NCBI GenBank assembly: GCA_965153285.1
Contig: OZ229111.1
Strand: one strand, 5' to 3'
Length of the DNA stretch: 64,000 bases
From: Podarcis tiliguerta
Taxonomy: Eukaryota
Below are positions 113-34,024 of this stretch, piece after piece. The number at the start of each line of letters is the position of its first letter. The stretch's first letter is position 1. A program made the position numbers and the translations under genes. The notes beneath the pieces were generated by a model, which saw only the letters and a list, made by a program, of their open reading frames with translations, was not told where the DNA came from and ran no database searches.

Positions 113-2584
113 TCCTGTTATGTAGCCTAAGAGGACCTCCCCACTTACCTAGGGAGTATGTCCAACTGAAATGAAAATGGCTTTACTGCTGAATTCACTT
201 GTCCTCTTAGAAGAGAAAGGACACAATCATTTTCAAGTGTGTTTCAGCATTTGATAGCTGTAGTCTTGTAGGGTGTTGGATAGATTCATCAATATAGATT
301 CCTCAGGTTTTTCCTTGAATTCTTTTTGCACCAAGTTGCACTTCAGTGGTAAGGCTGAACATTATGACCATTAATTCTGCCTGATATTTTGTGGCTCTTT
401 CGCTTGCGACCAAGCTACTCAGAATCAATGGCTAAACTGAGAATTGTACTCATTCTGTTTAGCATGTGGTGTAGGCCTTCACAACCCTAAGCCACAAGAG
501 AGCATTGCAGCTATTTGCATCTTTCCCAGATCATCTTCCCCTCCCCCCTTTTTAAAACTTGGGTATCTTTTCCGTAAATCACTTTCTGATCAAAAGCACA
601 GGATCTTGGAAGACATCCATGCAAGTTATTGGAACAGGATGCTGCAGCACATTCTTATCACTGTGGGTTGCTTCATTGTGCTTTTGAGCCAAAAGCCTGA
701 TCCAAATTTTTCACACTTTTATGCAATGCTATGTGAAGCTCTGCCAGTGCAACTTGTATTCTTCTGCAAGCCAGGATTCCTGAACGCTCTCATCTACTTC
801 CCTGATGCTAAGCAGGCTCGTGCATGCACGGGCTAATGGAGCAGACTTCACAGAATTTTAATCTTTAAGCTCATAAGTTCTTTTGACAGCTCTATTCACT
901 TTTACCTAGTAAATATGAAGGGTGCTTCCATTTTCACATAGCACTTCCATCACTGACCAATTGAGAGGATCATAAGTGAGTTGTTTGCTGCTTCAAAAAT
1001 GGATGAAGAGAGTATGGCTACAGGGCTCCTTTGAGACAAAGGGTGGGATTAAATTTAATATGTCGATTAAAAAAAATTAGTAATTCTCTTTTCTTCCCAG
1101 TTCAGTTCCCTGTTCTATACAAGCTAGCGTGCATTTATAGGCAAAAAGATTTCCCCAGCTCAGTTACCTGTACAAGGTATTGCAGATCATTTCTACATGC
1201 TTAAGGAAACAATGCTGAATATACCTTTGGGCTTTGCCTTTAGCGTGGAGCATGCTGAACTGAGATTTCGACAAACCTATTAGCAAGCAGAGTTTGCATC
1301 CATTAAAATAAATGAATCCACAATGGAATAGCACTAAAAAGACACTTTGTTGACTCACACCTGGCTTCCAGTTCCGCTTTCCCTTAATGGGGGCAGCCCC
1401 ATGACAGCAGAAGATAGTTGGCGAAGGGAAAAAAAAGATGATTGAGGGTAATCATTCTTGCAAATTCCTCCCAAGGGACAGAGGGAATGGGGCTTTACTC
1501 ACAGTCCATATCGGTACCTGGCGCTCGCTCCAGCATGGAATGCGGGGGCAGGGAGGCACTGAGTGCAAAAGCACTTTGTCTGGTGAAAACCCTCCAACGT
1601 CGCCATTAAGAAGCAGAGATTCTACTGTTAATTAGAACTTAATTGGAGTAAAGTACAGGCACATGCTAAAAGAGATGAGATCACAAACTGCGGAACAAAC
1701 CAACTGCAAGGACTTTAAGGTTTGAACTTGAGATAAGACTTCATTTGGTACAAAAGACGGTGGGGAAGAGGGGAGCCTACAGTTTCTTTATTTAAAGTTT
1801 TCTTCTCTACATTTATGATTCGGCAACCCTCCTCTGAATGTTAGTTCAAATTATATTTGTACAAGTGAGGATGGAAGAAATTGGATTATAAATATGGAAT
1901 ATAACACCAAACGGAACTGTTTGTGTAACAAAAAGGAGAAAGGGAGGGAAGCTGTATTTTGCAAAAGGTGTATGACGGAAACTTAGAGCTGACTCTTCCC
2001 CATCCTATATTATTTACAAAGTGAACTTAATAATGCTAAGAGGACTTTGAATTTAATTTAATTGGAAGTATAATTGCTCATATATCTTCAGTTGGAAGGA
2101 AGGATGAAAGGAGTCTATGAGCTGCCAAGGAACTGATAAGGTTCTTCACTGAGTCATCTGCAGTTCGACAGACTGCTCTCCTTCCCAGGCTGAGAAGAAA
2201 AATGGTGACAACAGTTTATTTACTGGGACAGAGCGACTATTGCATCTGTTGTTAAAGTTCTCTGTCCAAAAAACCCGACTATAATAATTGGCCAGAAGGA
2301 GCCTGAGTTTCACTTTCTCTTTCTATCTCTTCTTTCTGGTGTGCTGTTCTGTACATAGTACACTTAGTGTTAAGGTTTAGACTTATTATAAGTATTGTAA
2401 GTTTAGGTTAAGTCTGCTGCAACTGGATTTCTTATGGACAGTGCCAATCCTGGGTGTATTGGATTTGTGATCATTATGCTCATTTGCCTTCAGTAGCAGT
2501 AAAGCTCTGCTGGATTAAATACAATTGCCTGTGATCTGTTTTGGGGGATCCTGCAACATGTTTAAGTTTTTACTCTGCTAACTA

Positions 2585-2926
2585 GGAGCGTCTCAACCCC
2601 CATCGTTCAGCCCGGACACTGAGATCTAGTGCCGAGGGCCTTCTGGCGGTTCCCTCATTGCGAGAAGTGAGGCTACAGGGAACCAGACAGAGGGCCTTCT
2701 CAGTAGTGGCACCCGCCCTGTGGAACGCCCTCCCATCAGATGTCAAAGAGATAAACAACTACCTGACATTCAGAAGACATCTTAAGGCAGCCCTGTTCAG
2801 GGAAGTTTTTAATATGTAACACTGTACTGTTTTTAACACTTGATTGGGAGCCGCCCAGTGGCTGGGGAAACTCAGCCAGATGGGCGGGGTATAAATAATA
2901 AATTATTATTATTGTTATTATTATTA
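2585..2926 (+). mobile_element. L2-clade LINE 3' end with (ATT)n tail
   Basis: gccttctcagtagtggcacccgccctgtggaacgccctccc (AFSVVAPALWNALP, typical L2 ORF2 C-terminus), then gggcggggtataaataataaa and ATT repeats. Confidence 0.85.
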
Positions 2927-5634
2927 GCTATACATTGGAGTTCTGCTCTAGATCAATATTGAGTAGAATTTCATGACAATACAGGAGGTAGCAAGGGGGA
3001 GGAGAGGAGGGGGGAGTTTTTTTGCCGGAGCAGAAGCCTGTTTTGCAACAGTGTTGGATACAGCCCAGTGTTAGAATGAACCCAGTGGTAAACACACAGT
3101 GAGATGGATGTCATCTCTACTGTGATCAAAGCTGCCAAGGAAAGTGTAGCTGTCGTCATGGACATCCCTGTCACTCTCTGCATGTATGCTTCAAATCGTG
3201 CTAATCTTGCTCCTCAAGACAATGTACTCACATACATGTTTGTGTGGAGGAATTTGGCAAATACAGAAAATGCCAAAGCCGCAGCCAAACAGTACACAAG
3301 ATCTGCCTGCCCCCATAAGCCAGCCAGGCTTTGCAAGTCGCAGTGTGTCGCTGTGTCCACACATTCTCTTCCAGGCCTACCTGTAGATGTTGGTAATAGA
3401 TCCTGGGACCTTCTGCATGGAAAGCAGATGGTCTCTATCACCAAGCTACAGCCCTGTCCTCTATAAATGCACATGCAGCCTGCTTTACGTGTTAACCGGA
3501 TTTATACTTCAGCAAAAGACTTCAGTATCTCATGGAAAGACATGGTTTCAACAGATGAACATTAGCAACGTGCACAGTGGAAGCAGAGAGTGCAGAAATA
3601 AGTGGCTGGATGCCTGTATGTGGAGAGACGTCACTGGGAATTCACATGTTTCTTTTTTTCTTGCACCACTCAAATTTCTCCTTGATCCATGAATCATTGT
3701 AATTTCTAAGTAAAGCATAATTAGAAGGAATGTAGACCTCCATGTCGTATAATTGAAAAATATGTTTATGGAATAAATCAATAACAGCCTGTTTTGCAAA
3801 AGTGGCTTTGAACTGGCTAATTGGATTAGCAGCAGATGGTGGCTTTTCAATTGTCTTGGCTTAGAGCAACTGATTGCTTTTAAAAAATAATAATCACAAA
3901 AGACTTTTATTTAAGACAGATATTCCATAATCTGGGAATATCTATCTCTTCTCATCTGCCTGTGGCCTATTGTGCAATTTGAGTAATTCATAACTTTAGT
4001 GCTCATCTTATTTCACTTGTTTAAAAACAGCACTGTGTTGACAGACACATTTTCCCCTTTAGGACAATGTGTTCCCTTGCAACATTGTTCCTATAAATTA
4101 AGCATGTTGCTTTGCTAGGAATTTTAACAGGATCTTTCTATTGTACCAGATTCTTTGGTTTCTGCCTCTGTTTTGCTTCGTTCACATCTATTAATGACAG
4201 CATTGGGGTGAAGAGCCAAGCTCTAATTTGAGTTTTATAATTTCCTAACTTAAGCATTTTTTTCATGCAGTTCACTTGCTGCAATAAACCTCTGATTTGC
4301 CTTATTTATTCATTTTTAATTGAATTGTATCAGTGTTTTAATGCACTCTGAAAGCTTGGTTTAGGGCCCAATAAGCATTTTCTATTTCCATTGCTGTCTT
4401 TTGAAGTTAAAAGCAGTAAAACTCTATATGGAGTTTCCTTTGATACTTCAGAAGCTCCAGCTGGTGTGTAGCAGACAACCTGTCACGTTGTCCTCTCATC
4501 CTCATAGGGTAACATCTCACAGCAAAACTTCTCAGTAACCAGAGATTAGAAGCCAGGCTTCTCTGTAGCAAAACAGGATAAAATGATGGCCAGAGACAGT
4601 TACAACACAGGGGGCATACACTAACAAGGTCAAAGGAGGGGGAGAAACAAATAGATGCTCTGGTCTAGAATATCATTAAAAAGGTGAGGGGGGCAAGTCA
4701 GTCTTGTAGCCTATTAAAAAGAATTGAATAAAGGGGTCTTGAAAGGGCAGGATATTGATCCTCAAGTGGTAGCCTTGCCATTTCCTTTTGAAAGGCTACT
4801 ATTCTGCATATATGGACAGTGTGTTCATTTTTATCAAACCCTTTATTCACACCCTTTAAAACCCCAGGTGTCATGAAGTATTATAATGCGGGAAAGTACA
4901 ACAAAGGCCTCCTGCACTCGTAGGGCCAGTTCTTTTGATCACCCTTCGTGATGGAACTGTTGTAAAGCTGCTGTACAGAACAGGCCTTTTAAAATAAGAA
5001 GGGCAGGTTTAAAAAAAAAAAAAAAGATGGCCAGGTGGCAAATCTCGATCTGCTCAGTCACCTGCTTTTATCAGCTTTGCATAAGTACCTGGCACCAATT
5101 CATGCCCTTTTCTAAACTGGAAGGTTTCCAGTTTCACAGTTTATGTTTCCTGTAGTAACTGCAAGCAGGGACAATTATCTTTTCATTGCATTTTGTTTAT
5201 GTCATCTGTACTGTGAAGTATCATACTGATCCATGCCTATATACGCTATCTTACTCTTAATCATTTTTTATTTTATCACTATAATTTATATCCTACACAA
5301 AAACACACCCACACTATAATAGAACAATAGCAAACTTGTTCTTATGCTATTTAACAGCTGACTGTATTCATTATTTGACAATAATTAGCAAAGGGCCTGT
5401 TAGAAGTTCCGTATTGTTTTTATTACCTTAGGCTTCAACGTGTCTGTCTAAATTAAATTCAACGACACCAGATCTTTAGGGTTATCCTTTTAAGGTTAAA
5501 TGCTAAACTTACTTTTTGTTCAAAAAAATGTATTAGCATTGAGTCTATTGCAACGTTTCAGTTTCTAAGTTTTGCACACAGAGATCCAAAGCTTGATCAT
5601 TGGCATCTCTAGTTCAAAAGGCCAGGTAGTAAGT

Positions 5635-6950: not shown

Positions 6951-6972
6951 AGTTTAAAAGCTGCTTTGCCAC

Positions 6973-7406
6973 TGTAATGGTTCTAGGGATTGCTTGTGCG
7001 TAAGTTGCCTTTACTCGTGACTATCTTGCATGGTTGAACCCTTTCTGAGAGAGCAGCCTCTTTCTCGTGGCTGCCTCAGTCGCTGGCAGAATCCGTCAGT
7101 GGGTGTTTCTTAAAACGCTTCCAACATAAAAGCTGCTTGACGCCCAGTCTCCTCCCCCGTTGCCTGCGTGAAAGTTTTTTGTGCACTGTGGGCGCGGGCA
7201 ACGGAGCACTTGTCCCCTCTCCGCTTGTCTCCTGCGAAGAGTCCTGGAGCCAACTCTCCGCTTCCTCTATCTCCTCCCCTTCTCCACTGGTGTTGCGCTG
7301 ATTTCCTTCCCCAGCGTATGGGCTATCCCTCCTCCTACTGGGACCCTCTCCACCATCATCCGGGAGCCCTCTCGCCTCCTCCTGTTCCGATGGCAGTTCC
7401 CTGACA
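6973..7406 (-). mobile_element. Solo LTR (434 bp) inserted in CR1 ORF1
   Basis: TGT...ACA termini, exact 5-bp TSD GCCAC (6968-6972 and 7407-7411). The CR1 sequence resumes on both sides. Confidence 0.88.
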
Positions 7407-7610
7407 GCCACATTTTTTATTTTAAGTACCAGCAGTTTGTTTCCATTGCGGTTCAAATGGAGGAGCCCATTCCTCTTGTAAAGGCCTGGCTTGTCCCATA
7501 ATGTTCCCCAGTGCCTAACAAATCCAAAACCCTCTTCCCAATACCATTGTGTCATCCACACATCAGGACTGCAAAACTGCCTGTCCAGTTGGTCCTGTGT
7601 GTGAAACTGG
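7407..7610 (-). mobile_element. CR1 ORF1 fragment (SGNH esterase-like C-terminus)
   Basis: WMTQWYWEEGFGFVRHWGTLWDKPGLYKRNGLLHLNRNGNKLL resembles the DGLHL-type esterase end of CR1 ORF1. It continues at 6955-6972 beyond the LTR. Confidence 0.8.
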
Positions 7611-9691
7611 CAGCATTTCGATAAAGCCTTGTTGGTCCTGGTTTTCAACATACAACTGGTTTTCAACATACAACAGCCTAAAGATCTCCAATAAGATGTG
7701 AAAAACTGTTATTACACCGCCCCTCTGCCTGTCTGCCATTTCTCATTGGGATATCCCTGTCTGAGGTAGTTTGTCCACTTATAATTGCAGTGTATTACTT
7801 TCAAAAGCCTGCCTATGATGATCATAGTCTTCTATTCAAAACTGTAATTTGCATTTGTTCAGCTGTTATTTCCATCATTGTTCCAGCGTTGAGTAAACAG
7901 ACAGTGTCAGCTTTTTGGAATATTACATATTCACGTTCTTCTATATTCTGCAAGTTATGTGAGATGTTCTCAGTGGTGGTCACGAGGGCCCTATATTTTA
8001 GTATATATTGAAACCACATTGTTGCATACCATGAGTCTTATTTCATGTTCCTTGCTTCACTGCAGCCACTCACATTCTGCTAAAACCTACTATGCTATTT
8101 GACATCTATCTTTTATAAACAAGTCCCTCTAATGCATTTTCAGAGAGGGTTACTTACCAGATGAAGCTATTTTAGCCTGAACATTTTAAACTATTAAACC
8201 TAGGCTCTCCACATTAGCCAAAGCACATATTTTAACCCCTGTGACTATTTCATGCTTAACTCCATAAAGCTAAGACAGAAAAGACGACTAATGTAAATAC
8301 ACATTGCTATTTGCCTTGCTGATGCTGATGCTGTTTATTCTCTTAACAATAAGTTTTGCAGTTCCCAATAAGAAATAAATATTAGTTGATTAGTGAATAT
8401 TGTTGGTCACTGATGGTCTCTACATGAACATACACCTTTGTTTTTAAATGTGATATATAAGAGAAACGTTCAATTTACTTCATTTTTGCCCGTCGTACAC
8501 ATCAGGAAACATTTCTCCTTAAAAGGCCAGAAGGGTCACCACTGCAAAGAAAACTCTGGTCAATGGGATGATCATAAAAAGAAGGTTTTATCCAACTAAG
8601 TTCTAACCAAAAGAGACCCACTGAAATTAATGGACCTCATTTAGCCATGTCCATTAATTTTAAAGGGTTGACTCTGAATATTACTAGCACTGGATACAAC
8701 CCATACATTTGTTTTTGTAAATAGCTACCAAACTTTTAAGTTTTTTGTTCTGTTCAGCTAAGAAATTAAGATACTGGTTTAAAAGAACTGAGGATGGCCA
8801 GCCCTTGAGCCAGAAGCTGCATCTGTTGCTGTTTGTGACCACAGCATAAGAATGACTGCTGCCGTCATCCATCTTACTTTCCTTCTGCTCCATGTTCTGT
8901 GATACAGAACTGGAGTTTCATTTGCTATCAGAAGAAGGAAAGCAGGACAAGAGAATGGACTGTCACACTACTGAGAAGGGTATCACCTTTCTGACCGAAA
9001 GTTAATGTGCTGGTGCTGTTAAACAAGAGAAAAGTGTCTCCTGATCAGGACCCTAAGTGTGTTGATTGCAGTCATGTCAAGGATTTAGCTGAAAAGCAGT
9101 TGTGTGCTACTGACTGTGTTCTAGTTTTCGACTATTTTAGAGAGTTCCAACTGTTTCTGGTTAAACTAAAATGTGTCTGAAACAACAGTTTGGCTTTTTT
9201 CTTTTTTTCTTTTTGCACTGGCAGCATGCATAAGCGTGCTTCAGCTCAGCCAATTTTCTTTTAGACAGATCTTTCAATGTAAAGCTTTTTTCAATGCTCT
9301 TGAGCAGGTTTTTGATAACATTGTCCTGTGAAAGCAATATATCCTTCAACATCTCACAGACATAAATATAGGTACGTCTGTTGTACACCTTCTCTGACCC
9401 TTTATTGGTCATAGTAAATATAGTTAGATGATGCACGCACGTGCACACACACATCTTAGGGCTGTGCCATTTAAAAGTCCAGTGAGGCCTAACATTCTGC
9501 TCCTAATAAACCAGAATTGCTTGTGATCTAAGCTCACCCAATACACTTGAAAAGGTCCACACACAGAACAAGGGGCAAAGTATCCTGATGGTATAGACTG
9601 GGCTGTTCACATGTGAGGGTTTATTTTCAGGCATCCATGCTCAGTGCGCATCAGGGATGGCGCTAGTCCAGCTGCACATCATTGCAGATGA

Positions 9692-12834: not shown

Positions 12835-13336
12835 CTAGACAGCATTTTAAAAAGTAGAGACATCACCTTGCCAACAAAGGTCCGTATACTAAAAGCTATG
12901 GTTTTCCCAGTAGTGATGTATGGAAGTGAGAGCTGGACCATAAAGAGGGCTGATCGCCGAAGAATTGACGCTTTTGAATTATGGTGCTGGAGGAAACTCT
13001 TGAGAGTCCCATGGACTGCAAGAAGATCAAATGCATCCATTCTCAGGGAGATCAGCCCTGAGTGCTCACTGGAAGGACAGATCGTGAAGCTGAGGCTCCA
13101 ATACTTTGGCCACCTCATGAGAAGACTCCCTGGAAAAGACCCTGATGTTGGGAAAGATGGAGGGCACAAGGAGAAGGGGACGACAGAGGACGAAATGGTT
13201 AGACAGTGTTCTCGAAGCTACAAACATGAATCTGACCAAACTGCGGGTGGCAGTGGAAGACAGGAGTGCCTGGCGTGCTCTGGTCCATGGGGTCACGAAG
13301 AGTCGGACACGACTGAACGACTAAACAACAACAACA
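12835..13336 (+). mobile_element. 5'-truncated RTE-BovB LINE with (CAA)n tail
   Basis: TLPTKVRILKAMVFPVVMYGSESWTIKRADRRRIDAFELWCWRKLLRVPWTARRSN is the BovB ORF C-terminus. Perfect 12-bp TSD gagtgtgtgtag (12823-12834 and 13337-13348). Confidence 0.95.
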
Positions 13337-13557
13337 GAGTGTGTGTAGATACTGGCCTACTGTACATAAGTAAAACTTGCACTTGTTGCTTTGCCCACTT
13401 TTGCCAATGGATCCTCAGCCTGAAAAACGTTCCCTACCCCTGGGTTGGAGTACAGGTAACTCACAACTTACGCAGATTTAACTTGTACTCATTCAGATTT
13501 ACATGCTTGGTAAATAAATAAAAAATACAAAGGGAGTGGTCCTCCAGGAAAAAAAAT

Positions 13558-20000: not shown

Positions 20001-21611
20001 GTTTAGCTGGCAAATGCAGTTCATAATGCAAAGTTCCTGGAAATTTTGAAGACACTGAAAATTGGTTTCTGTGTTTCTCTGGAAATAGCGAATCTTAAAA
20101 TAAAATAAAAATACATGTGCTAATTGCTGTAGGACTATTTACTGCTGCCAGGATTGGTAAAACAATGCATTCTACAGCCTTTTCCCATATTACTGGAGTC
20201 TTGCACAAAGGGGAAACCTTCCCCAGCCTAAAGCCCTTCAGATGGTTTGGACGACATCTCCCATCAACTTCACCCAGCCTAGGCAAATTGGACACCAAGA
20301 TGGGCAAAGCTGTTTTGAGCACTCACCCATCAAACAGACAGTTGGTGTCAGATTGGCTCTCCAAATGTCATTGGTTTATCATCTCCATCATCCCTGACCA
20401 ATAGCCATGCTGTCTGGAACTGTTGGAAATTGTAGTACAGCAAAATCTGGGTTACTGTTGGGTTGGAGATATGGAAGGCAGAATGTATTTGGAAAAAGAG
20501 GGCAAGCACAGAATATTTGATGACTATTACATTAGCCAGATGTCTCACTCTATTCCCATGAGAGTATAGGGGCCAGAGTTAGCATGAGGTGTAACAATAG
20601 AAAATAATCTGATAAATTGTGTCCCTACAGTCAGTTTAGTGGACTACATCATATCAATGACCATTTTACATCTGTTTCATGGAAGTCTTTCTGGAGAACT
20701 TCCAACTTTCTGTTTTGTCTCCACTCCCTCACTATTGCATCAAAATTCATAGGTCCTTTAATTAGGTTCTGCGCTATGAACCATTTCCTGTGTCAAACAA
20801 ATTGGCTATTGATGAGTATGTAACCTTATTAGGAGAGTAGCATAAAACAGCATGGAACACAGTTCCACACAGGGAAGTTAGCTATTCATTGCACAGTAAC
20901 ATTAAGAGAGCAAAAATAATTGCAGCTGTATTTAAGGGGGAGAATGCTGTAGGGCATTCTTGCAGTGCTCTTTAAGGGGAGAGGCCATAGCTCAGTGGCT
21001 TGCCTGCAAAGGCTCCTATAGCACCTCCAGGGGCAGGGTGGGAAGATGAATTTCCCATTTTGTGGGAATTTCCCATTTTCACTTTCCCATTTTGTGCCTT
21101 CTCCCCCTCTCTCGACTCCCACACCAACTGCTCTGCTTCCCCTCTCCTCACCACTGCTTCTTCTCATGCTGCTTTCCTGCGTAAATAGACCAGTTTGTGG
21201 GGTGTTGGGTTTTTTTTTTGGAAAATTGGGTTTTAGTCATATAAGTGTGGAATACAATTCAGCCGTAATGTTCAACTATATGTTTTATTTTCACTTCTGT
21301 AGTGTTTCTTTCTGCAAAATATTTGGCTGCATTCTGTGATTGATTTTTGCCAGTTTGAGGAAAACAATCATACATTTGTGAATACAGATCTATAGAAAGC
21401 AGCAGTGGTGAACATATTTATGGAAAAGTTGCTATGGAAAAATAAACAAAAATCACAAGGAAGTAGAAATCAACAGATATTAGGAAGCCAAAAGTATGTT
21501 GGGAAACTGAACATATTTTGAAGATCTCTTCCCGTGCATTTGAAGGATAGAATGTGAACTGATAGAAAAGATAAATGTAGTTAGAGAAGAATGAAATGTA
21601 GCACTGCAACA

Positions 21612-21748
21612 CAGCCTTTGCCAACCTGGTGTCTTCCAGATTTTTTGACTACAACTCCCATCAGCCCCTGCTGGCATGACTGTAATATATAGGACTGATG
21701 GGAATTATGGCCCAAAACATCTAGAGGGCACCAAGTTGGTGAAGATTG
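21612..21748. mobile_element. hAT MITE related to the 5635-5770 family
   Basis: gactacaactcccatcagccc...gatgggaatt..gcccaaaacatctagagggc. TSD ctgcaaca / ctgtaaaa (6 of 8). Confidence 0.8.
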
Positions 21749-21921
21749 CTGTAAAATAACCACTTAATTGCCTTCCTCTTGCACTTTATCACCATTGAAA
21801 GAAACTGAATGGAGATGTACCCATTACTCTATCTGGAAACTGACTAGCTTGTAGAGAAGGCTCGAGTAGAATATACATTCCAGATCCCACCATTGATAGG
21901 GGACAAACCTTACTATGTTAA

Positions 21922-22285
21922 TGTCAGAGGCTTAGTGCTGTCCAGCTGGCCATAGATAAGACTCCGGGCTCCCAGCCAGTTCCAAACAATTGATTTATTT
22001 GACAAAGTTCAAACGTACATCTCCAGCGTTTCCATTAGCCTCCTTCCCCTTGTGCGCAGGTGCTCCCTCTAATCTTACTTCCTCCTTTTCCGCACCCAGC
22101 ATGCAAGTCTGCGAAAACTCCTCCCCTTACTTCCTCTGTGTACAGCATGACTTGTCCCAGGCTCATCCTCCTCCGCCTCTACGTCAGACTGACTGTCAGA
22201 CGACAAGCTGCTGATAATCTCTTTAGGCTCTCCATAACTGCTGGTTTCTGTCCTTTCATCTTTTCCCGTTTGCCTCTCCCTGACA
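21922..22285 (-). mobile_element. Solo LTR (364 bp)
   Basis: Termini TGTCAG...CTGACA (6-bp inverted), exact 5-bp TSD GTTAA (21917-21921 and 22286-22290), AATAAA on the - strand at 21994-21999. Confidence 0.9.
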
Positions 22286-23069
22286 GTTAAGACAAACTAA
22301 GACCGCATTAATGTGGTCATGTTCAGGTCCAAGATCTTGTGATGTCAGAGTTTGTTGGTTCAATCTAGTTACGGTACATAAGAAATGCTCCCAAGGAGCC
22401 AGCGCCATAATATTAACCAGATTATTTAGCAGTCTTGTAGTCTTTAAGTGTGCTTAAAGCAGAATTTTATAACCATCCATTTTTGCATGTCTAAAGCATG
22501 ACATTAGATGAAAGGAACAAAAAACAAACACCCCCAAAACAGATGGCCATATCACAAAAGAATGATACAGCTACATTAAGATAGCTATTGAGATCTGGCT
22601 AGCATCCTGTGTAAAAACAAGGGCACAATACTTTGGGTAAAATATGCAGAATCTGAACAATGAGAAGAGGTTGTTGCTATATATTCAGAGAAAGGGTACA
22701 TTTTTAAGCTTGAAACTCAGAAGATCATATTGAGGACATAATTTCTATGTTTTAATAAGAAAGTGAGGAGTCAGAACAGCAGATGATTGGAAGAGTGGGC
22801 CATGAATGTGTGGTAATTACAGTGTGTTACTGCAATCTCAGAACTGATGTAAGTATGCAATACAGAGGCATTTGAATACAAGTCACGATGCATCCTCAAG
22901 GAGCCCAGAGTGACAGTGCTCAAGATAACTTGAAAGGTATGTTGGTTTGAGTCCCAGGGTTTGGGGGGGGGGCTCCTAGATCAATTGCTGTTTACTAGAG
23001 AAATCCAGCTGACTCAGAGTGCCCATTGCCAACTTTAGTTGGTGCATCACCTATGGCAATTCCTGGACA

Positions 23070-26368: not shown

Positions 26369-26560
26369 GGAAGTGCCATAGCTCAGAGGTAGAGCATCTG
26401 TTTTGCATGCTGAAGATCCTAGGTTCAATCCCTGCTACCACTAGGTGGGACTGGGAATGTCCTCTGTCTGAAAACCTGGATAGTCATTGCCAGTCAGTCA
26501 TACTGATCTAGATGGAATCAATGGTCTGACTCAGTATAAGGCAGGTTTTGATGTTCCTAT
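26369..26560 (+). mobile_element. tRNA-derived SINE (Squam2-like)
   Basis: A box TAGCTCAGAGG (26379), B box GGTTCAATCC (26422), body ending ctcagtataaggcag...atgttccta. Confidence 0.8.
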
Positions 26561-31944: not shown

Positions 31945-32740
31945 GAACTGCGTAAAAATGTGCAATCCTTCCTGCACACAGGAAGTCCCCTCTCCCCCTC
32001 CATATTTCTGGTGGTGAAAATAGTCTGGCCAATTAAACCTGGTTGGCAAAATGAGTTACATGGTTCTCATGGGGGTCCATGAGACACGCCTGTGCTTCTG
32101 GGGAAAAAATCAAAGCCCCAGACAGTAAAAAGCAGGAAGTTTATTCTTTGGTGGAAAATAAATACCTGTACAAATAAATTAATTCTCTAATAATTATAAT
32201 TCCTCAGGTTTCAGGCCTGAATCCTATCTCAAATAGCTGTAATACCACGTCAGCCTTGACGATACAGCGGGTTAGTGCTAGTTTTTAAAAGGAGAAATGA
32301 AAGAGCCGGAAAGCCTGGCTGCTGTGTGAGGCGTCACGGCGGAAAAAGAAAGGCGCTTTGCTTATGCTCAGAGGCACTCTTTCCCCCTCGGCCGTGAGTG
32401 AGCCTGGTGCATGGAGCCCAAGCTTCGCGAGGTATCCTGCTGCAGCTCCTGTAGCGCGACGCTGAAGAGGACGCCCTGCGCGGAAGGCTCCGCTCTGCCC
32501 GCCCCTCCCTCCTTCCAAAACTTTCGCCCGACCTTCCCTGCCAAAGTTCCGAAGTTTGGTGACGTCAGCGGCGCGGCCGCCAATCCGCGCCGAAGGTGTT
32601 ATTTTGGGGAGGGGAGGGGGCGGCTCCTCCGGCTCCGGCGCCCGCCTGCTTCGCCTTGCCCAGTCCATGGAGAGGCGGTCGGCTGCGAGCGCCCCTGGAT
32701 CGCTCCCAGCTCCGGAGGCTCTGATCCCGGGACCTGGGCG

Positions 32741-32761
32741 CTGCTGCTGCTGCTGCTGCTG
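32741..32761 (+). repeat. (CTG)7 in the presumed SLIT3 5' UTR
   Basis: ctgctgctgctgctgctgctg read directly. Confidence 0.95.
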
Positions 32762-33170
32762 CCGCGGTCTCCAGGGGACAGGCTGGGCTTCCCGCCAGGC
32801 GCTTCCGAGTGCGCTCCTGGGCTGCTGAGCTCCGTCGCTCCTTCTCCAGCAACCGGTTACCTGGACTGCGAGGCAGAGCAGGATCGGGCAGGTTGTGGCT
32901 TAAAGCAACGGACCGGCCCCCTCTCTTCCACCCGCCCGCCCGTTTTGATCCTGCGCGCTTTCCGCCTGGGCTTGAAAGGCAACGCGACGATCCGTCCGGG
33001 GACTCGGAAAGAGATGCCTCCCGCACCGCCGGGCTTCCCTCGGCTGCTCTGAGATCGCTGCGTGGCGCCCTCGAGGGCTGCTGGTTGGGATCCGAGGCGC
33101 TTTTTTGGTGGGGTTCTCTTTTTCTCCCTCCTCCCCCCTTCCCCACTTTTGCCCGGAGGAGAAGGCGAGC

Positions 33171-33358
33171 ATGCTGGGCGCAGGGAGAACGAGCTGGGGG
33201 CGCCTTGGGGTGCTCCTCTTGGGGATGTGGAGCATCGCGCTGTGGCAGCGGACCGAAGGATGCCCGAGTAAATGTACCTGCTCCGGATCCAATGTGGATT
33301 GCCACGGACTGGGACTCCGAGCGGTGCCCCGAGGCATTCCCAGGAATGCGGAGAGACT
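33171..33358 (+). CDS. SLIT3: SLIT3 coding exon 1: signal peptide plus LRRNT cap ([63 protein letters not shown])
   Basis: ATG at 33171 (agcATGc, A at -3), hydrophobic leader, then CPxxCxC...[22 protein letters not shown], which matches the vertebrate SLIT3 N-terminus as I recall it. Ends in phase 2 at CT|GTGAGT (GT at 33359). Confidence 0.95.
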
Positions 33359-34024
33359 GTGAGTACCAGCCGGAGGAGGGGGAGGCTGCTTTGCCCGCCA
33401 GGTTGCCGAGAAGGAGACTGCTCCTGCCGGGCGTAGATTAGACACAGCTGTTAAAATAAGATAGCCTAAGATAGAAACGGGGAGAGTGGTGCTTTCGCCG
33501 GGTTGGACCGCTGGCCACTGGCAGCTTCAGGGCACTGGAGTTCCTGGGGATTGTGAGCCACGGGGAGGTGCCGGGCTGCTCCTCTTAACTTCCTGGCAAG
33601 CAACAGAGCTCAAAGCACTCCAGGAAGAGAGAGCCTTATAAAGAGCCTTTGTGGGTTTCTTTTCTAATTGCATAGCAGCTTAGCCATTGTGTGTAAATGC
33701 TCAGGAAGGAAAAGAGGGAGTGTGTGGTGGGAGAACCACATGCAACAAGTATGCTTGGCATTTTTCCACATGATGCTCACTGGAATGTCTCACCAGACTT
33801 TGCGCTGGCTTACTGACATTTGCACATCCACACTGCATTCGCTCAAGGTGCATCTGCTTGGTTGCAATTGGAGGGGGCATCTGACTGCCATAGTCAATAT
33901 GTAGGGTCCTTTAAGCCTAGGCTGGTTTGTGGTTGCCTGCAAGGCTAACCCGAACAGTCTGTGACTAGTTCAGCCTCTGCCTGTTTCTACAGCTGGTTTT
34001 CCACGCGCATTACATAACTCTCTC

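What the first reader, a model, noticed from the sequence alone, without database searches (positions are those of the whole stretch)
22075..22284. Solo LTR encodes an uninterrupted acidic-then-basic peptide from LTR base 2, resembling the one in the 6973-7406 LTR
Seen: the - strand from base 2 of this LTR (hand translation; no ATG at its start, absent from the ORF track) gives 69 codons: VRERQTGKDERTETSSYGEPKEIISSLSSDSQSDVEAEEDEPGTSHAVHRGSKGRSFRRLACWVRKRRK*. The LTR at 6973-7406, read from the same position, gives VRELPSEQEE...EEIEEAE...GEGTSAPLPAPTVHKKLSRRQRGRRLGVKQLLCWKRFKKHPLTDSASD*. The two LTRs differ in length and I see little nucleotide similarity beyond the first ~9 bp. They nonetheless share frame, the VRE start, an acidic block, GTS, VH, a basic block and LxCWxR followed by a K/R cluster. 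Inference: in the full-length elements pol probably reads through the polypurine tract into the 3' LTR U3, adding an acidic plus NLS-like tail to integrase that is conserved at protein level. Known analogies are coding sequence overlapping the 3' LTR (HIV nef, MMTV sag, the CR motif of plant CRM centromeric retrotransposons) and the acidic/NLS C-terminus of Ty1 integrase. I do not know of a description for squamate LTR elements. This is the best candidate here for an undescribed system.
Basis: partly seen in the sequence, partly recalled or inferred. Interest (0 to 1): 0.8.

Follow-up and report, generated by a model that had tools for sequence, protein, structure and literature searches.

The report
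Young solo LTR with open U3 frame
This is a recently inserted lone LTR of a lizard retroelement whose first 210 bases form one open reading frame; the frame may be left over from a pol tail encoded inside the LTR, as in some plant retrotransposons, but that could not be shown here and chance is nearly as likely.

Summary
The minus strand from LTR base 2 (22284 down to 22075) reads 69 codons plus a stop, net charge -8 then +10. The LTR at 6973-7406 reads 109 codons in the same frame (-12 then +10). Both are true solo LTRs with perfect 5-bp target duplications and the same first nine bases. LTR A is really 21922-22285 (364 bp). It is young: three related organisms carry the exact empty site.

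The interpretation, that pol reads through the polypurine tract into U3, could not be tested. The window holds no full-length element, and the tool that fetches contigs was closed.

What could be tested is mixed:
- For: both frames are open from base 2 (window-wide chance 4.3% and 1.2%). The two peptides resemble each other more than either resembles any of 302 background open frames.
- Against: block shuffles give only P 0.006-0.04. There is no codon periodicity, and family variants look neutral. The only two relatives among 1.84 billion proteins are short LTR-type ORFs that do not keep the basic LxCWxR block in frame.

First-stage notes report the same kind of coding U3 elsewhere in this genome, all unchecked. 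The layout is already known from plant CRM chromoviruses.

The parts
21922..22285 (-). Solo LTR A, 364 bp, TGTCAG...CTGACA ends. It is a young insertion and belongs to a family whose summed contig depth is roughly 60-250 times single copy.
   Evidence: Sequence. An empty-site joint skips 21917-22285 (369 bases = LTR plus one duplication) in runs X1, X21 and X12. In X18 the site is filled, with contigs crossing both junctions at zero differences. Depth is about 1100-3000 against 15-18 in X18.
22286..22290 (-). Upstream copy of the 5-bp target-site duplication (TTAAC on the minus strand).
   Evidence: In one search the empty-site joint has 5 letters that fit on either side.
21917..21921 (-). Downstream copy of the 5-bp target-site duplication.
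22075..22284 (-). Open frame from LTR base 2: 69 codons plus TAA, no Met, net charge -8 then +10, ending in a K/R cluster. A second in-frame stop (TAG) lies two codons further on.
   Evidence: In part of the family the stop is replaced by AAA (22077 A>T), which would add only two codons.
21994..21999 (-). AATAAA poly(A) signal at LTR positions 287-292. It sets the LTR orientation and places the open frame in U3.
   Evidence: Read. The assignment of U3, R and U5 is inference.
6973..7406 (-). Solo LTR B, 434 bp, with the same first 9 bases as A. Its 5-bp duplication (GTGGC on the minus strand) lies at 7407-7411 and 6968-6972.
7076..7405 (-). Open frame of LTR B from base 2: 109 codons plus stop, no Met, net charge -12 then +10.

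Best explanation
Shown: 21922-22285 is a young, lineage-specific solo LTR of a multi-copy LTR retroelement family.

Inferred, and only slightly favoured over chance: in the intact parent element, the last gene continued across the polypurine tract into the 3' LTR. That gene is most likely the integrase end of pol. LTR base 1 was the third base of a codon, and the first 210 bases of U3 encoded a Met-less tail that is acidic first and then basic. The tail would be disordered. Its terminal K/R cluster would serve nuclear import or chromatin tethering of the integrase-DNA complex. The frame ends in an A/T-rich patch about 75 bases before AATAAA, where the core promoter would sit.

After LTR-LTR recombination only the LTR remains, so here the frame is a fossil and is not expressed. 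LTR B would be the same layout in a related family that uses the same LTR terminus.
For: - Both TSD-bounded solo LTRs share the terminus TGTCAGGGA, which occurs nowhere else in the window.
- Both are open from base 2 in the same frame, for 69 and 109 codons. The window-wide chance is 4.3% and 1.2%.
- Neither frame has a Met, as expected for a C-terminal extension (weak evidence).
- Both switch from about -10 to +10 net charge and end with K/R clusters.
- The peptide similarity (score 57) exceeds all 604 comparisons with background open frames and exceeds shuffles. Nucleotide similarity is not significant.
- The copy is young: there is an empty site in three organisms, and at only three sites does nearly all the family depth read another letter than this copy. 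Its frame therefore reflects the source element.
- None of the 16 shared family variants in the ORF creates a stop. Only one frameshifting indel is listed in the ORF's 210 bases, against six indels in the other 153 bases (Fisher P 0.045).
- The layout has a documented precedent: the gag-pol ORF of CRM-clade and some Bingo chromoviruses extends into the 3' LTR (PMC3059260; PMC3605345).
- Unchecked first-stage notes report Gypsy pol reading through the PPT into the LTR elsewhere in this genome.
Against: - No full-length element was seen, so continuity with pol is not shown.
- P0001 and P0002 are the only relatives among 1.84 billion representatives. Both are short ORFs of 57 and 85 aa, and neither is a pol fusion.
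- P0001 changes to A's other frame after about 40 residues (12 of 16 identical there, where A has a stop). P0002 lacks the CW and K/R block. The basic block is therefore not conserved in frame.
- Neither ORF shows three-base periodicity (P about 0.3).
- Shared family variants fall 8, 4 and 4 on codon positions 1, 2 and 3. Five are synonymous, ten are not, and one removes the stop. This is indistinguishable from neutral.
- Block shuffles leave the A-B resemblance at P 0.006-0.04, and 20 of the 57 score points come from one Cys-Trp pair.
- Open stretches of this length are common in the window.
- There were no Pfam, PDB or Atlas relatives, and the Atlas recognition value is low.
Confidence: 0.42

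Rival explanations
1. Chance open frame. U3 of these LTRs is purine-rich and T-poor on this strand for reasons unrelated to translation, for example regulatory sequence. Stop codons are therefore rare, and one of three frames happens to stay open from the LTR start. The acidic-then-basic look follows from GAR, AAR and AGR codons in purine-rich DNA. Pol ends upstream of the polypurine tract as usual.
For: - T makes up only 14-16% of the two ORF stretches.
- LTR shuffles reach an equally long open frame in some frame 33-40% of the time.
- The window holds 202 open stretches of at least 70 codons and 42 of at least 110.
- There is no codon periodicity, and the variant pattern looks neutral.
- The related LTR ORFs P0001 and P0002 carry homologous DNA in different frames over the basic block.
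- The third frame of A against B is also somewhat similar (P 0.018).
Against: - Two independent LTRs are open in the same frame from the same base (4.3% x 1.2% if specified in advance).
- The A-B peptide score is above all 604 background comparisons.
- Many similar notes come from the same genome, two of them claiming direct continuity with Gypsy pol (unchecked).
Confidence: 0.4
2. A separate accessory gene in U3. It would be translated from a spliced subgenomic RNA whose first coding exon lies upstream, in the way MMTV sag, HIV nef and foamy-virus bel/bet overlap the 3' LTR. It would not be a pol tail.
For: The frame has no Met, so it needs an upstream start. Its basic, Arg-rich end is of the kind seen in small retroviral regulators (own knowledge). 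The 5-bp duplication and the TG..CA ends with AATAAA fit an endogenous retrovirus as well as a Gypsy element.
Against: The frame is open right from LTR base 2, and no splice acceptor was examined or is needed to explain it. No relative with such a structure was found. No RNA run holds the locus.
Confidence: 0.06

Closest known systems
CRM-clade (group A) centromeric chromoviruses of plants, and Bingo1-4 and Bingo7 of Beta vulgaris
   Same: The gag-pol ORF runs past the polypurine tract into the 3' LTR, so the LTR encodes the C-terminal integrase tail, a putative targeting domain (PMC3059260; PMC3605345). This is the layout proposed here.
   Different: These are plant elements whose LTRs start with TGATG. 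Their tail is the CR motif, a chromodomain-position motif, not an acidic-then-basic peptide. Continuity with pol is demonstrated for CRM but not here. No sequence similarity was tested or expected.
Retroviral genes that overlap U3 of the 3' LTR (HIV/SIV nef, MMTV sag, foamy-virus bel/bet); own knowledge
   Same: Protein-coding sequence lies inside U3, so promoter and coding constraints overlap.
   Different: Those genes have their own start codon or a spliced leader, and they are not integrase extensions. Here there is no Met, and the frame starts at LTR base 2.
C-terminal nuclear localisation and tethering tails of integrases (Ty1 and Ty3 integrase NLS, MLV integrase tail that binds BET proteins); own knowledge
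   Same: They are disordered C-terminal integrase tails with basic clusters, used for nuclear entry or chromatin targeting.
   Different: Those tails are encoded upstream of the polypurine tract. No motif match was tested here, and the K/R cluster is only a pattern.

Membership tests
Solo LTR of an LTR retroelement | TG...CA termini with a short inverted repeat | tested here: met
   A has TGTCAG...CTGACA and B has TGT...ACA.
Solo LTR of an LTR retroelement | Perfect short target-site duplication, and an empty site in relatives | tested here: met
   The duplications are TTAAC (A) and GTGGC (B). Three runs from three other organisms show a joint that skips exactly LTR A plus 5 bases. The empty site was not tested for B.
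Solo LTR of an LTR retroelement | Repeated family in the genome | tested here: met
   Summed contig depth over the LTR is roughly 60-250 times that of the flanks in four runs, at 80% likeness or more. The tool warns that depth is not a copy number.
Ty3/Gypsy (Metaviridae) | RT and integrase phylogeny, pol domain order, primer binding site and polypurine tract | not testable with these tools
   There is no internal region in the window. The contigs of P0001 and P0002 could not be fetched. The Gypsy assignment comes only from unchecked notes on other windows.
LTR elements with a coding 3' LTR (CRM-like layout) | The last ORF is continuous across the polypurine tract into the LTR in full-length copies | not testable with these tools
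   No full-length copy was reachable.
LTR elements with a coding 3' LTR (CRM-like layout) | The same frame is kept open across related LTR families | tested here: inconclusive
   A and B share the frame. P0001 and P0002 keep it for 48 and 58 residues, but not over the basic block. Those two hits were found through their frame, so the N-terminal agreement is biased.
LTR elements with a coding 3' LTR (CRM-like layout) | Purifying selection on the frame (excess of synonymous changes, codon periodicity) | tested here: inconclusive
   Of the shared variants, 5 are synonymous, 10 are non-synonymous and 1 removes the stop. They fall 8, 4 and 4 on codon positions 1, 2 and 3. There is no periodicity. 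Indels are fewer in the ORF (P 0.045), but the counts are not independent.
Classical nuclear localisation signal | A K/R cluster that drives nuclear import | not testable with these tools
   K/R clusters are present at the ends of both peptides. Showing function needs a fusion-protein test.

The most novel reading that the evidence does not exclude
Several LTR retrotransposon families of this squamate encode the end of integrase inside U3. That end is an acidic spacer plus a basic nuclear or chromatin-binding tip. Every LTR would then be both a promoter and a protein-coding exon, and the tail would evolve fast, even by frame changes, while keeping its charge pattern. This would be a vertebrate counterpart of the plant CRM layout with a different kind of tail.
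Probability: 0.35. Interest if true: 0.55.

Novelty: new member of a known kind. Interest (0 to 1): 0.3.

Why it matters
If pol really ends inside U3 in these lizard elements, LTR sequence evolution would be shaped by both promoter function and a protein tail. Solo LTRs would scatter ready-made acidic/basic coding exons through the genome. The tail would also be a candidate determinant of where these elements integrate, as the CR motif is for plant centromeric retrotransposons. If the frame is chance, the case is a caution instead: T-poor U3 regions produce long 'peptides' that look meaningful, and the many similar first-stage notes in this genome would need the same control.

Tried and rejected
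- **Word-index protein searches.** A alone, B alone and the alignment of A, P0001 and P0002 returned nothing beyond P0001 and P0002.
- **Exhaustive search with A.** It gave only P0001 and P0002, each a single-member Logan cluster from a contig of 1249 or 1770 bases. The lack of pol fusions says little. Logan contigs inside this LTR are only about 80-180 bases long, and even A's own family is missing from the protein library.
- **The look-up of encoding contigs.** It was closed, so the DNA of P0001 and P0002 could not be read and no dN/dS could be computed.
- **Metagenome scan with the LTR start.** It gave one hit, L001, a GC-rich bacterial contig that matches only the 20-base pattern.
- **Viral contigs.** No relatives.
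- **Pfam, PDB sequences and ESM Atlas.** Nothing.
- **Pfam on the 10 longest window ORFs.** No pol domain.
- **Sequence look-up in the scan's notes.** Blank.
- **The open frame upstream of LTR B.** I considered that the 88 open codons there made it a 3' LTR with pol attached. I rejected this because the 5-bp duplication brackets the LTR alone.
- I re-ran it from references.
- **No consensus LTR.** I did not build one (see referred steps).

Full report
**What is there**

The LTR at 6973-7406, read from the same position, gives 109 codons and a stop.

The finding's coordinates cover only the open frame. The LTR itself runs from 22285 down to 21922 (364 bp, TGTCAG...CTGACA). It is bracketed by a perfect TTAAC duplication at 22286-22290 and 21917-21921. 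LTR B (434 bp) is bracketed by GTGGC on the minus strand at 7407-7411 and 6968-6972.

The nine bases TGTCAGGGA occur only twice in the 64 kb, exactly at these two LTR starts. An AATAAA at 21994-21999 on the minus strand fixes the orientation of A and places the open frame in U3 (the U3/R/U5 split is my inference).

**Solo status and age**

I laid Logan contigs of four runs from four coded organisms on 21600-22600.
- Three runs (X1, X21, X12) gave a joint that skips 21917-22285. That is 369 bases, the LTR plus one duplication, with 5 letters fitting either side.
- The best holder, X18, has contigs crossing both junctions with no differences.

The insertion is therefore lineage-specific or polymorphic, and young. 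At only three sites (22060, 22175, 22233) does nearly all the family depth read a different letter from this copy.

Summed contig depth over the LTR is roughly 60-250 times that of the flanks. This points to a moderately repeated family, though the tool warns that depth is not a copy number.

**Is the open frame more than chance?**

Taken alone, only mildly.
- The two ORF stretches are purine-rich with 14-16% T.
- Shuffled LTRs reach an equally long open frame in some frame 33-40% of the time. They are open from base 2 only about 1% of the time.
- Across the window, a random position and frame is open for at least 69 codons in 4.3% of cases and for at least 109 codons in 1.2%. There are 202 stop-to-stop stretches of at least 70 codons.
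- Two independent LTRs open in the same frame from the same base would be rare if specified in advance, but the case was chosen after the fact.
- Neither frame has a Met. Both switch from net charge about -10 to +10.

**Resemblance of the two peptides**

- BLASTP finds only 8 of 26 identical residues, E 0.034.
- The local alignment score of 57 lies 4.5 SD above full shuffles (P 0.001-0.0025).
- When residues are shuffled only within blocks of 6-20, which keeps the acidic and basic segments, P is 0.006-0.04.
- Against 302 other open stretches of the window, the best scores are 40 for A and 46 for B, so 57 exceeds all 604 comparisons.
- 20 of the 57 points come from the single Cys-Trp pair. B's best background hit is an unrelated ORF (12835-13518) that also carries a Cys-Trp followed by basic residues.
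- The two LTRs do not align significantly as DNA (P 0.08-0.09). The third frame also shows some similarity (P 0.018).

I read this as a real but weak signal.

**Relatives**

The word-index searches found nothing for A or B. After that, the exhaustive search of 1.84 billion representatives with A gave two hits:
- P0001: 57 aa, 57% identity, E 5.5e-07.
- P0002: 85 aa, 47% identity, E 1.7e-04.

Each is a single-member cluster from a Logan contig of 1249 or 1770 bases. Neither is a pol fusion.

Mapping them on the three frames of LTR A is informative.
- P0001 follows A's frame for 48 residues. Its last 16 residues then match A's other frame (12 of 16 identical), where A itself has a stop.
- P0002 follows A's frame for 58 residues from the second LTR codon. 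Where A has the Cys-Trp and K/R block, P0002 has a different sequence that weakly resembles A's third frame. It stays open beyond A's stops.

The DNA of this stretch therefore appears to be homologous, clearly for P0001 and only weakly for P0002, but the basic block is not kept in frame. The agreement over the acidic part is biased, because the hits were found through it.

The lack of pol fusions is weak evidence. Contigs inside this LTR are only about 80-180 bases long, and A's own family is absent from the protein library.

**Selection tests within the family**

One search lists 16 variants in the ORF that are shared by at least 10% of depth.
- They fall 8, 4 and 4 on codon positions 1, 2 and 3.
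- Five are synonymous, ten are non-synonymous, and one turns the stop into Lys, which would add two codons before the next stop.
- None creates a stop, but only 4.5% of possible changes would. The excess of synonymous changes is not significant (P 0.18).
- The listed indels are one frameshifting insertion and one in-frame 39-base deletion in the 210-base ORF, against six in the other 153 bases (Fisher P 0.045).
- Several of those six come from a single divergent contig and lie in T runs, so I give this test little weight.
- Neither ORF has three-base periodicity (P about 0.3).

**What could not be done**

- The window has no second copy of either LTR and no direct repeat pair of 80 bases or more within 15 kb. 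None of the 10 longest of its 32 ORFs of at least 100 aa matches a Pfam family, so no pol domain was seen.
- A metagenome scan with the LTR start returned one chance bacterial match. Viral contigs gave nothing.
- Pfam, PDB sequences and the ESM Atlas gave nothing.

Continuity of this frame with pol is the heart of the interpretation, and it is untested.

**Context from the scan**

First-stage notes on other windows of the same genome describe the same kind of thing many times: solo LTRs whose U3 is an open acidic-then-basic frame.
- Two notes claim that a Gypsy pol reads through the polypurine tract into the LTR.
- One note describes a 434-letter solo LTR, about 2 Mb from this window, that shares a motif with a Gypsy pol tail.

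All are unchecked. I use them only to raise the prior, not as support.

**Comparison with what is known**

The proposed layout is not new in kind. [quoted passage not shown] Retroviral nef, sag and bel/bet also overlap U3 (own knowledge). My paper searches turned up no description for squamate elements, but these searches were not exhaustive.

**Verdict**

The solo-LTR anatomy is firmly shown.
- 'U3-encoded pol tail': about 0.42.
- 'Chance frame in T-poor U3': about 0.40.
- A separately expressed U3 gene: about 0.06.

The specific claim of a conserved LxCWxR-plus-basic motif is not supported by the nearest relatives. The decisive test is simple in the source assembly, but it was out of reach here.

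Noticed in passing
window 21600-21760: A very high-copy short repeat lies next to LTR A. Summed contig depth reaches about 2000 times single copy, with many joints and loose ends, which suggests a SINE-like element.
   Followed up: no
window 7407-7669 (-): The host flank upstream of LTR B stays open for 88 codons in the same frame as the LTR's ORF, giving a 197-aa ATG ORF (7076-7669). The 5-bp duplication shows that it is not part of the element. Pfam gives only a sub-threshold Arb2-like match (E 0.15). From memory, its end looks like an old LINE ORF1 esterase remnant; this is unverified.
   Followed up: partly
window 12835-13518 (+): A 217-aa ORF carries a Cys-Trp followed by basic residues. 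It was the best background match to peptide B (score 46). From memory it resembles the C-terminal region of a LINE ORF2. Pfam found no family at E 0.01.
   Followed up: partly
window 26372-26443 (+): A tRNA-Ala (anticodon TGC) is detected by Rfam (44.1 bits) and by ARAGORN. Whether it is a real tRNA gene or a SINE head was not resolved.
   Followed up: partly
window 32285-33445: A GC-rich island (62-68% GC against 42% for the window) holds five overlapping ORFs of 127-246 aa on both strands. The four longest have no Pfam match. It looks like a CpG island, perhaps a promoter or first exon.
   Followed up: partly
window 22430: One contig of run X1 carries a 15-base insertion here, in the unique flank of LTR A. 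It is an indel difference between related organisms.
   Followed up: no
L001 165-184: This metagenome contig matches only the 20-base LTR start. The rest is GC-rich bacterial-looking DNA, so it is a chance hit and not a relative.
   Followed up: yes
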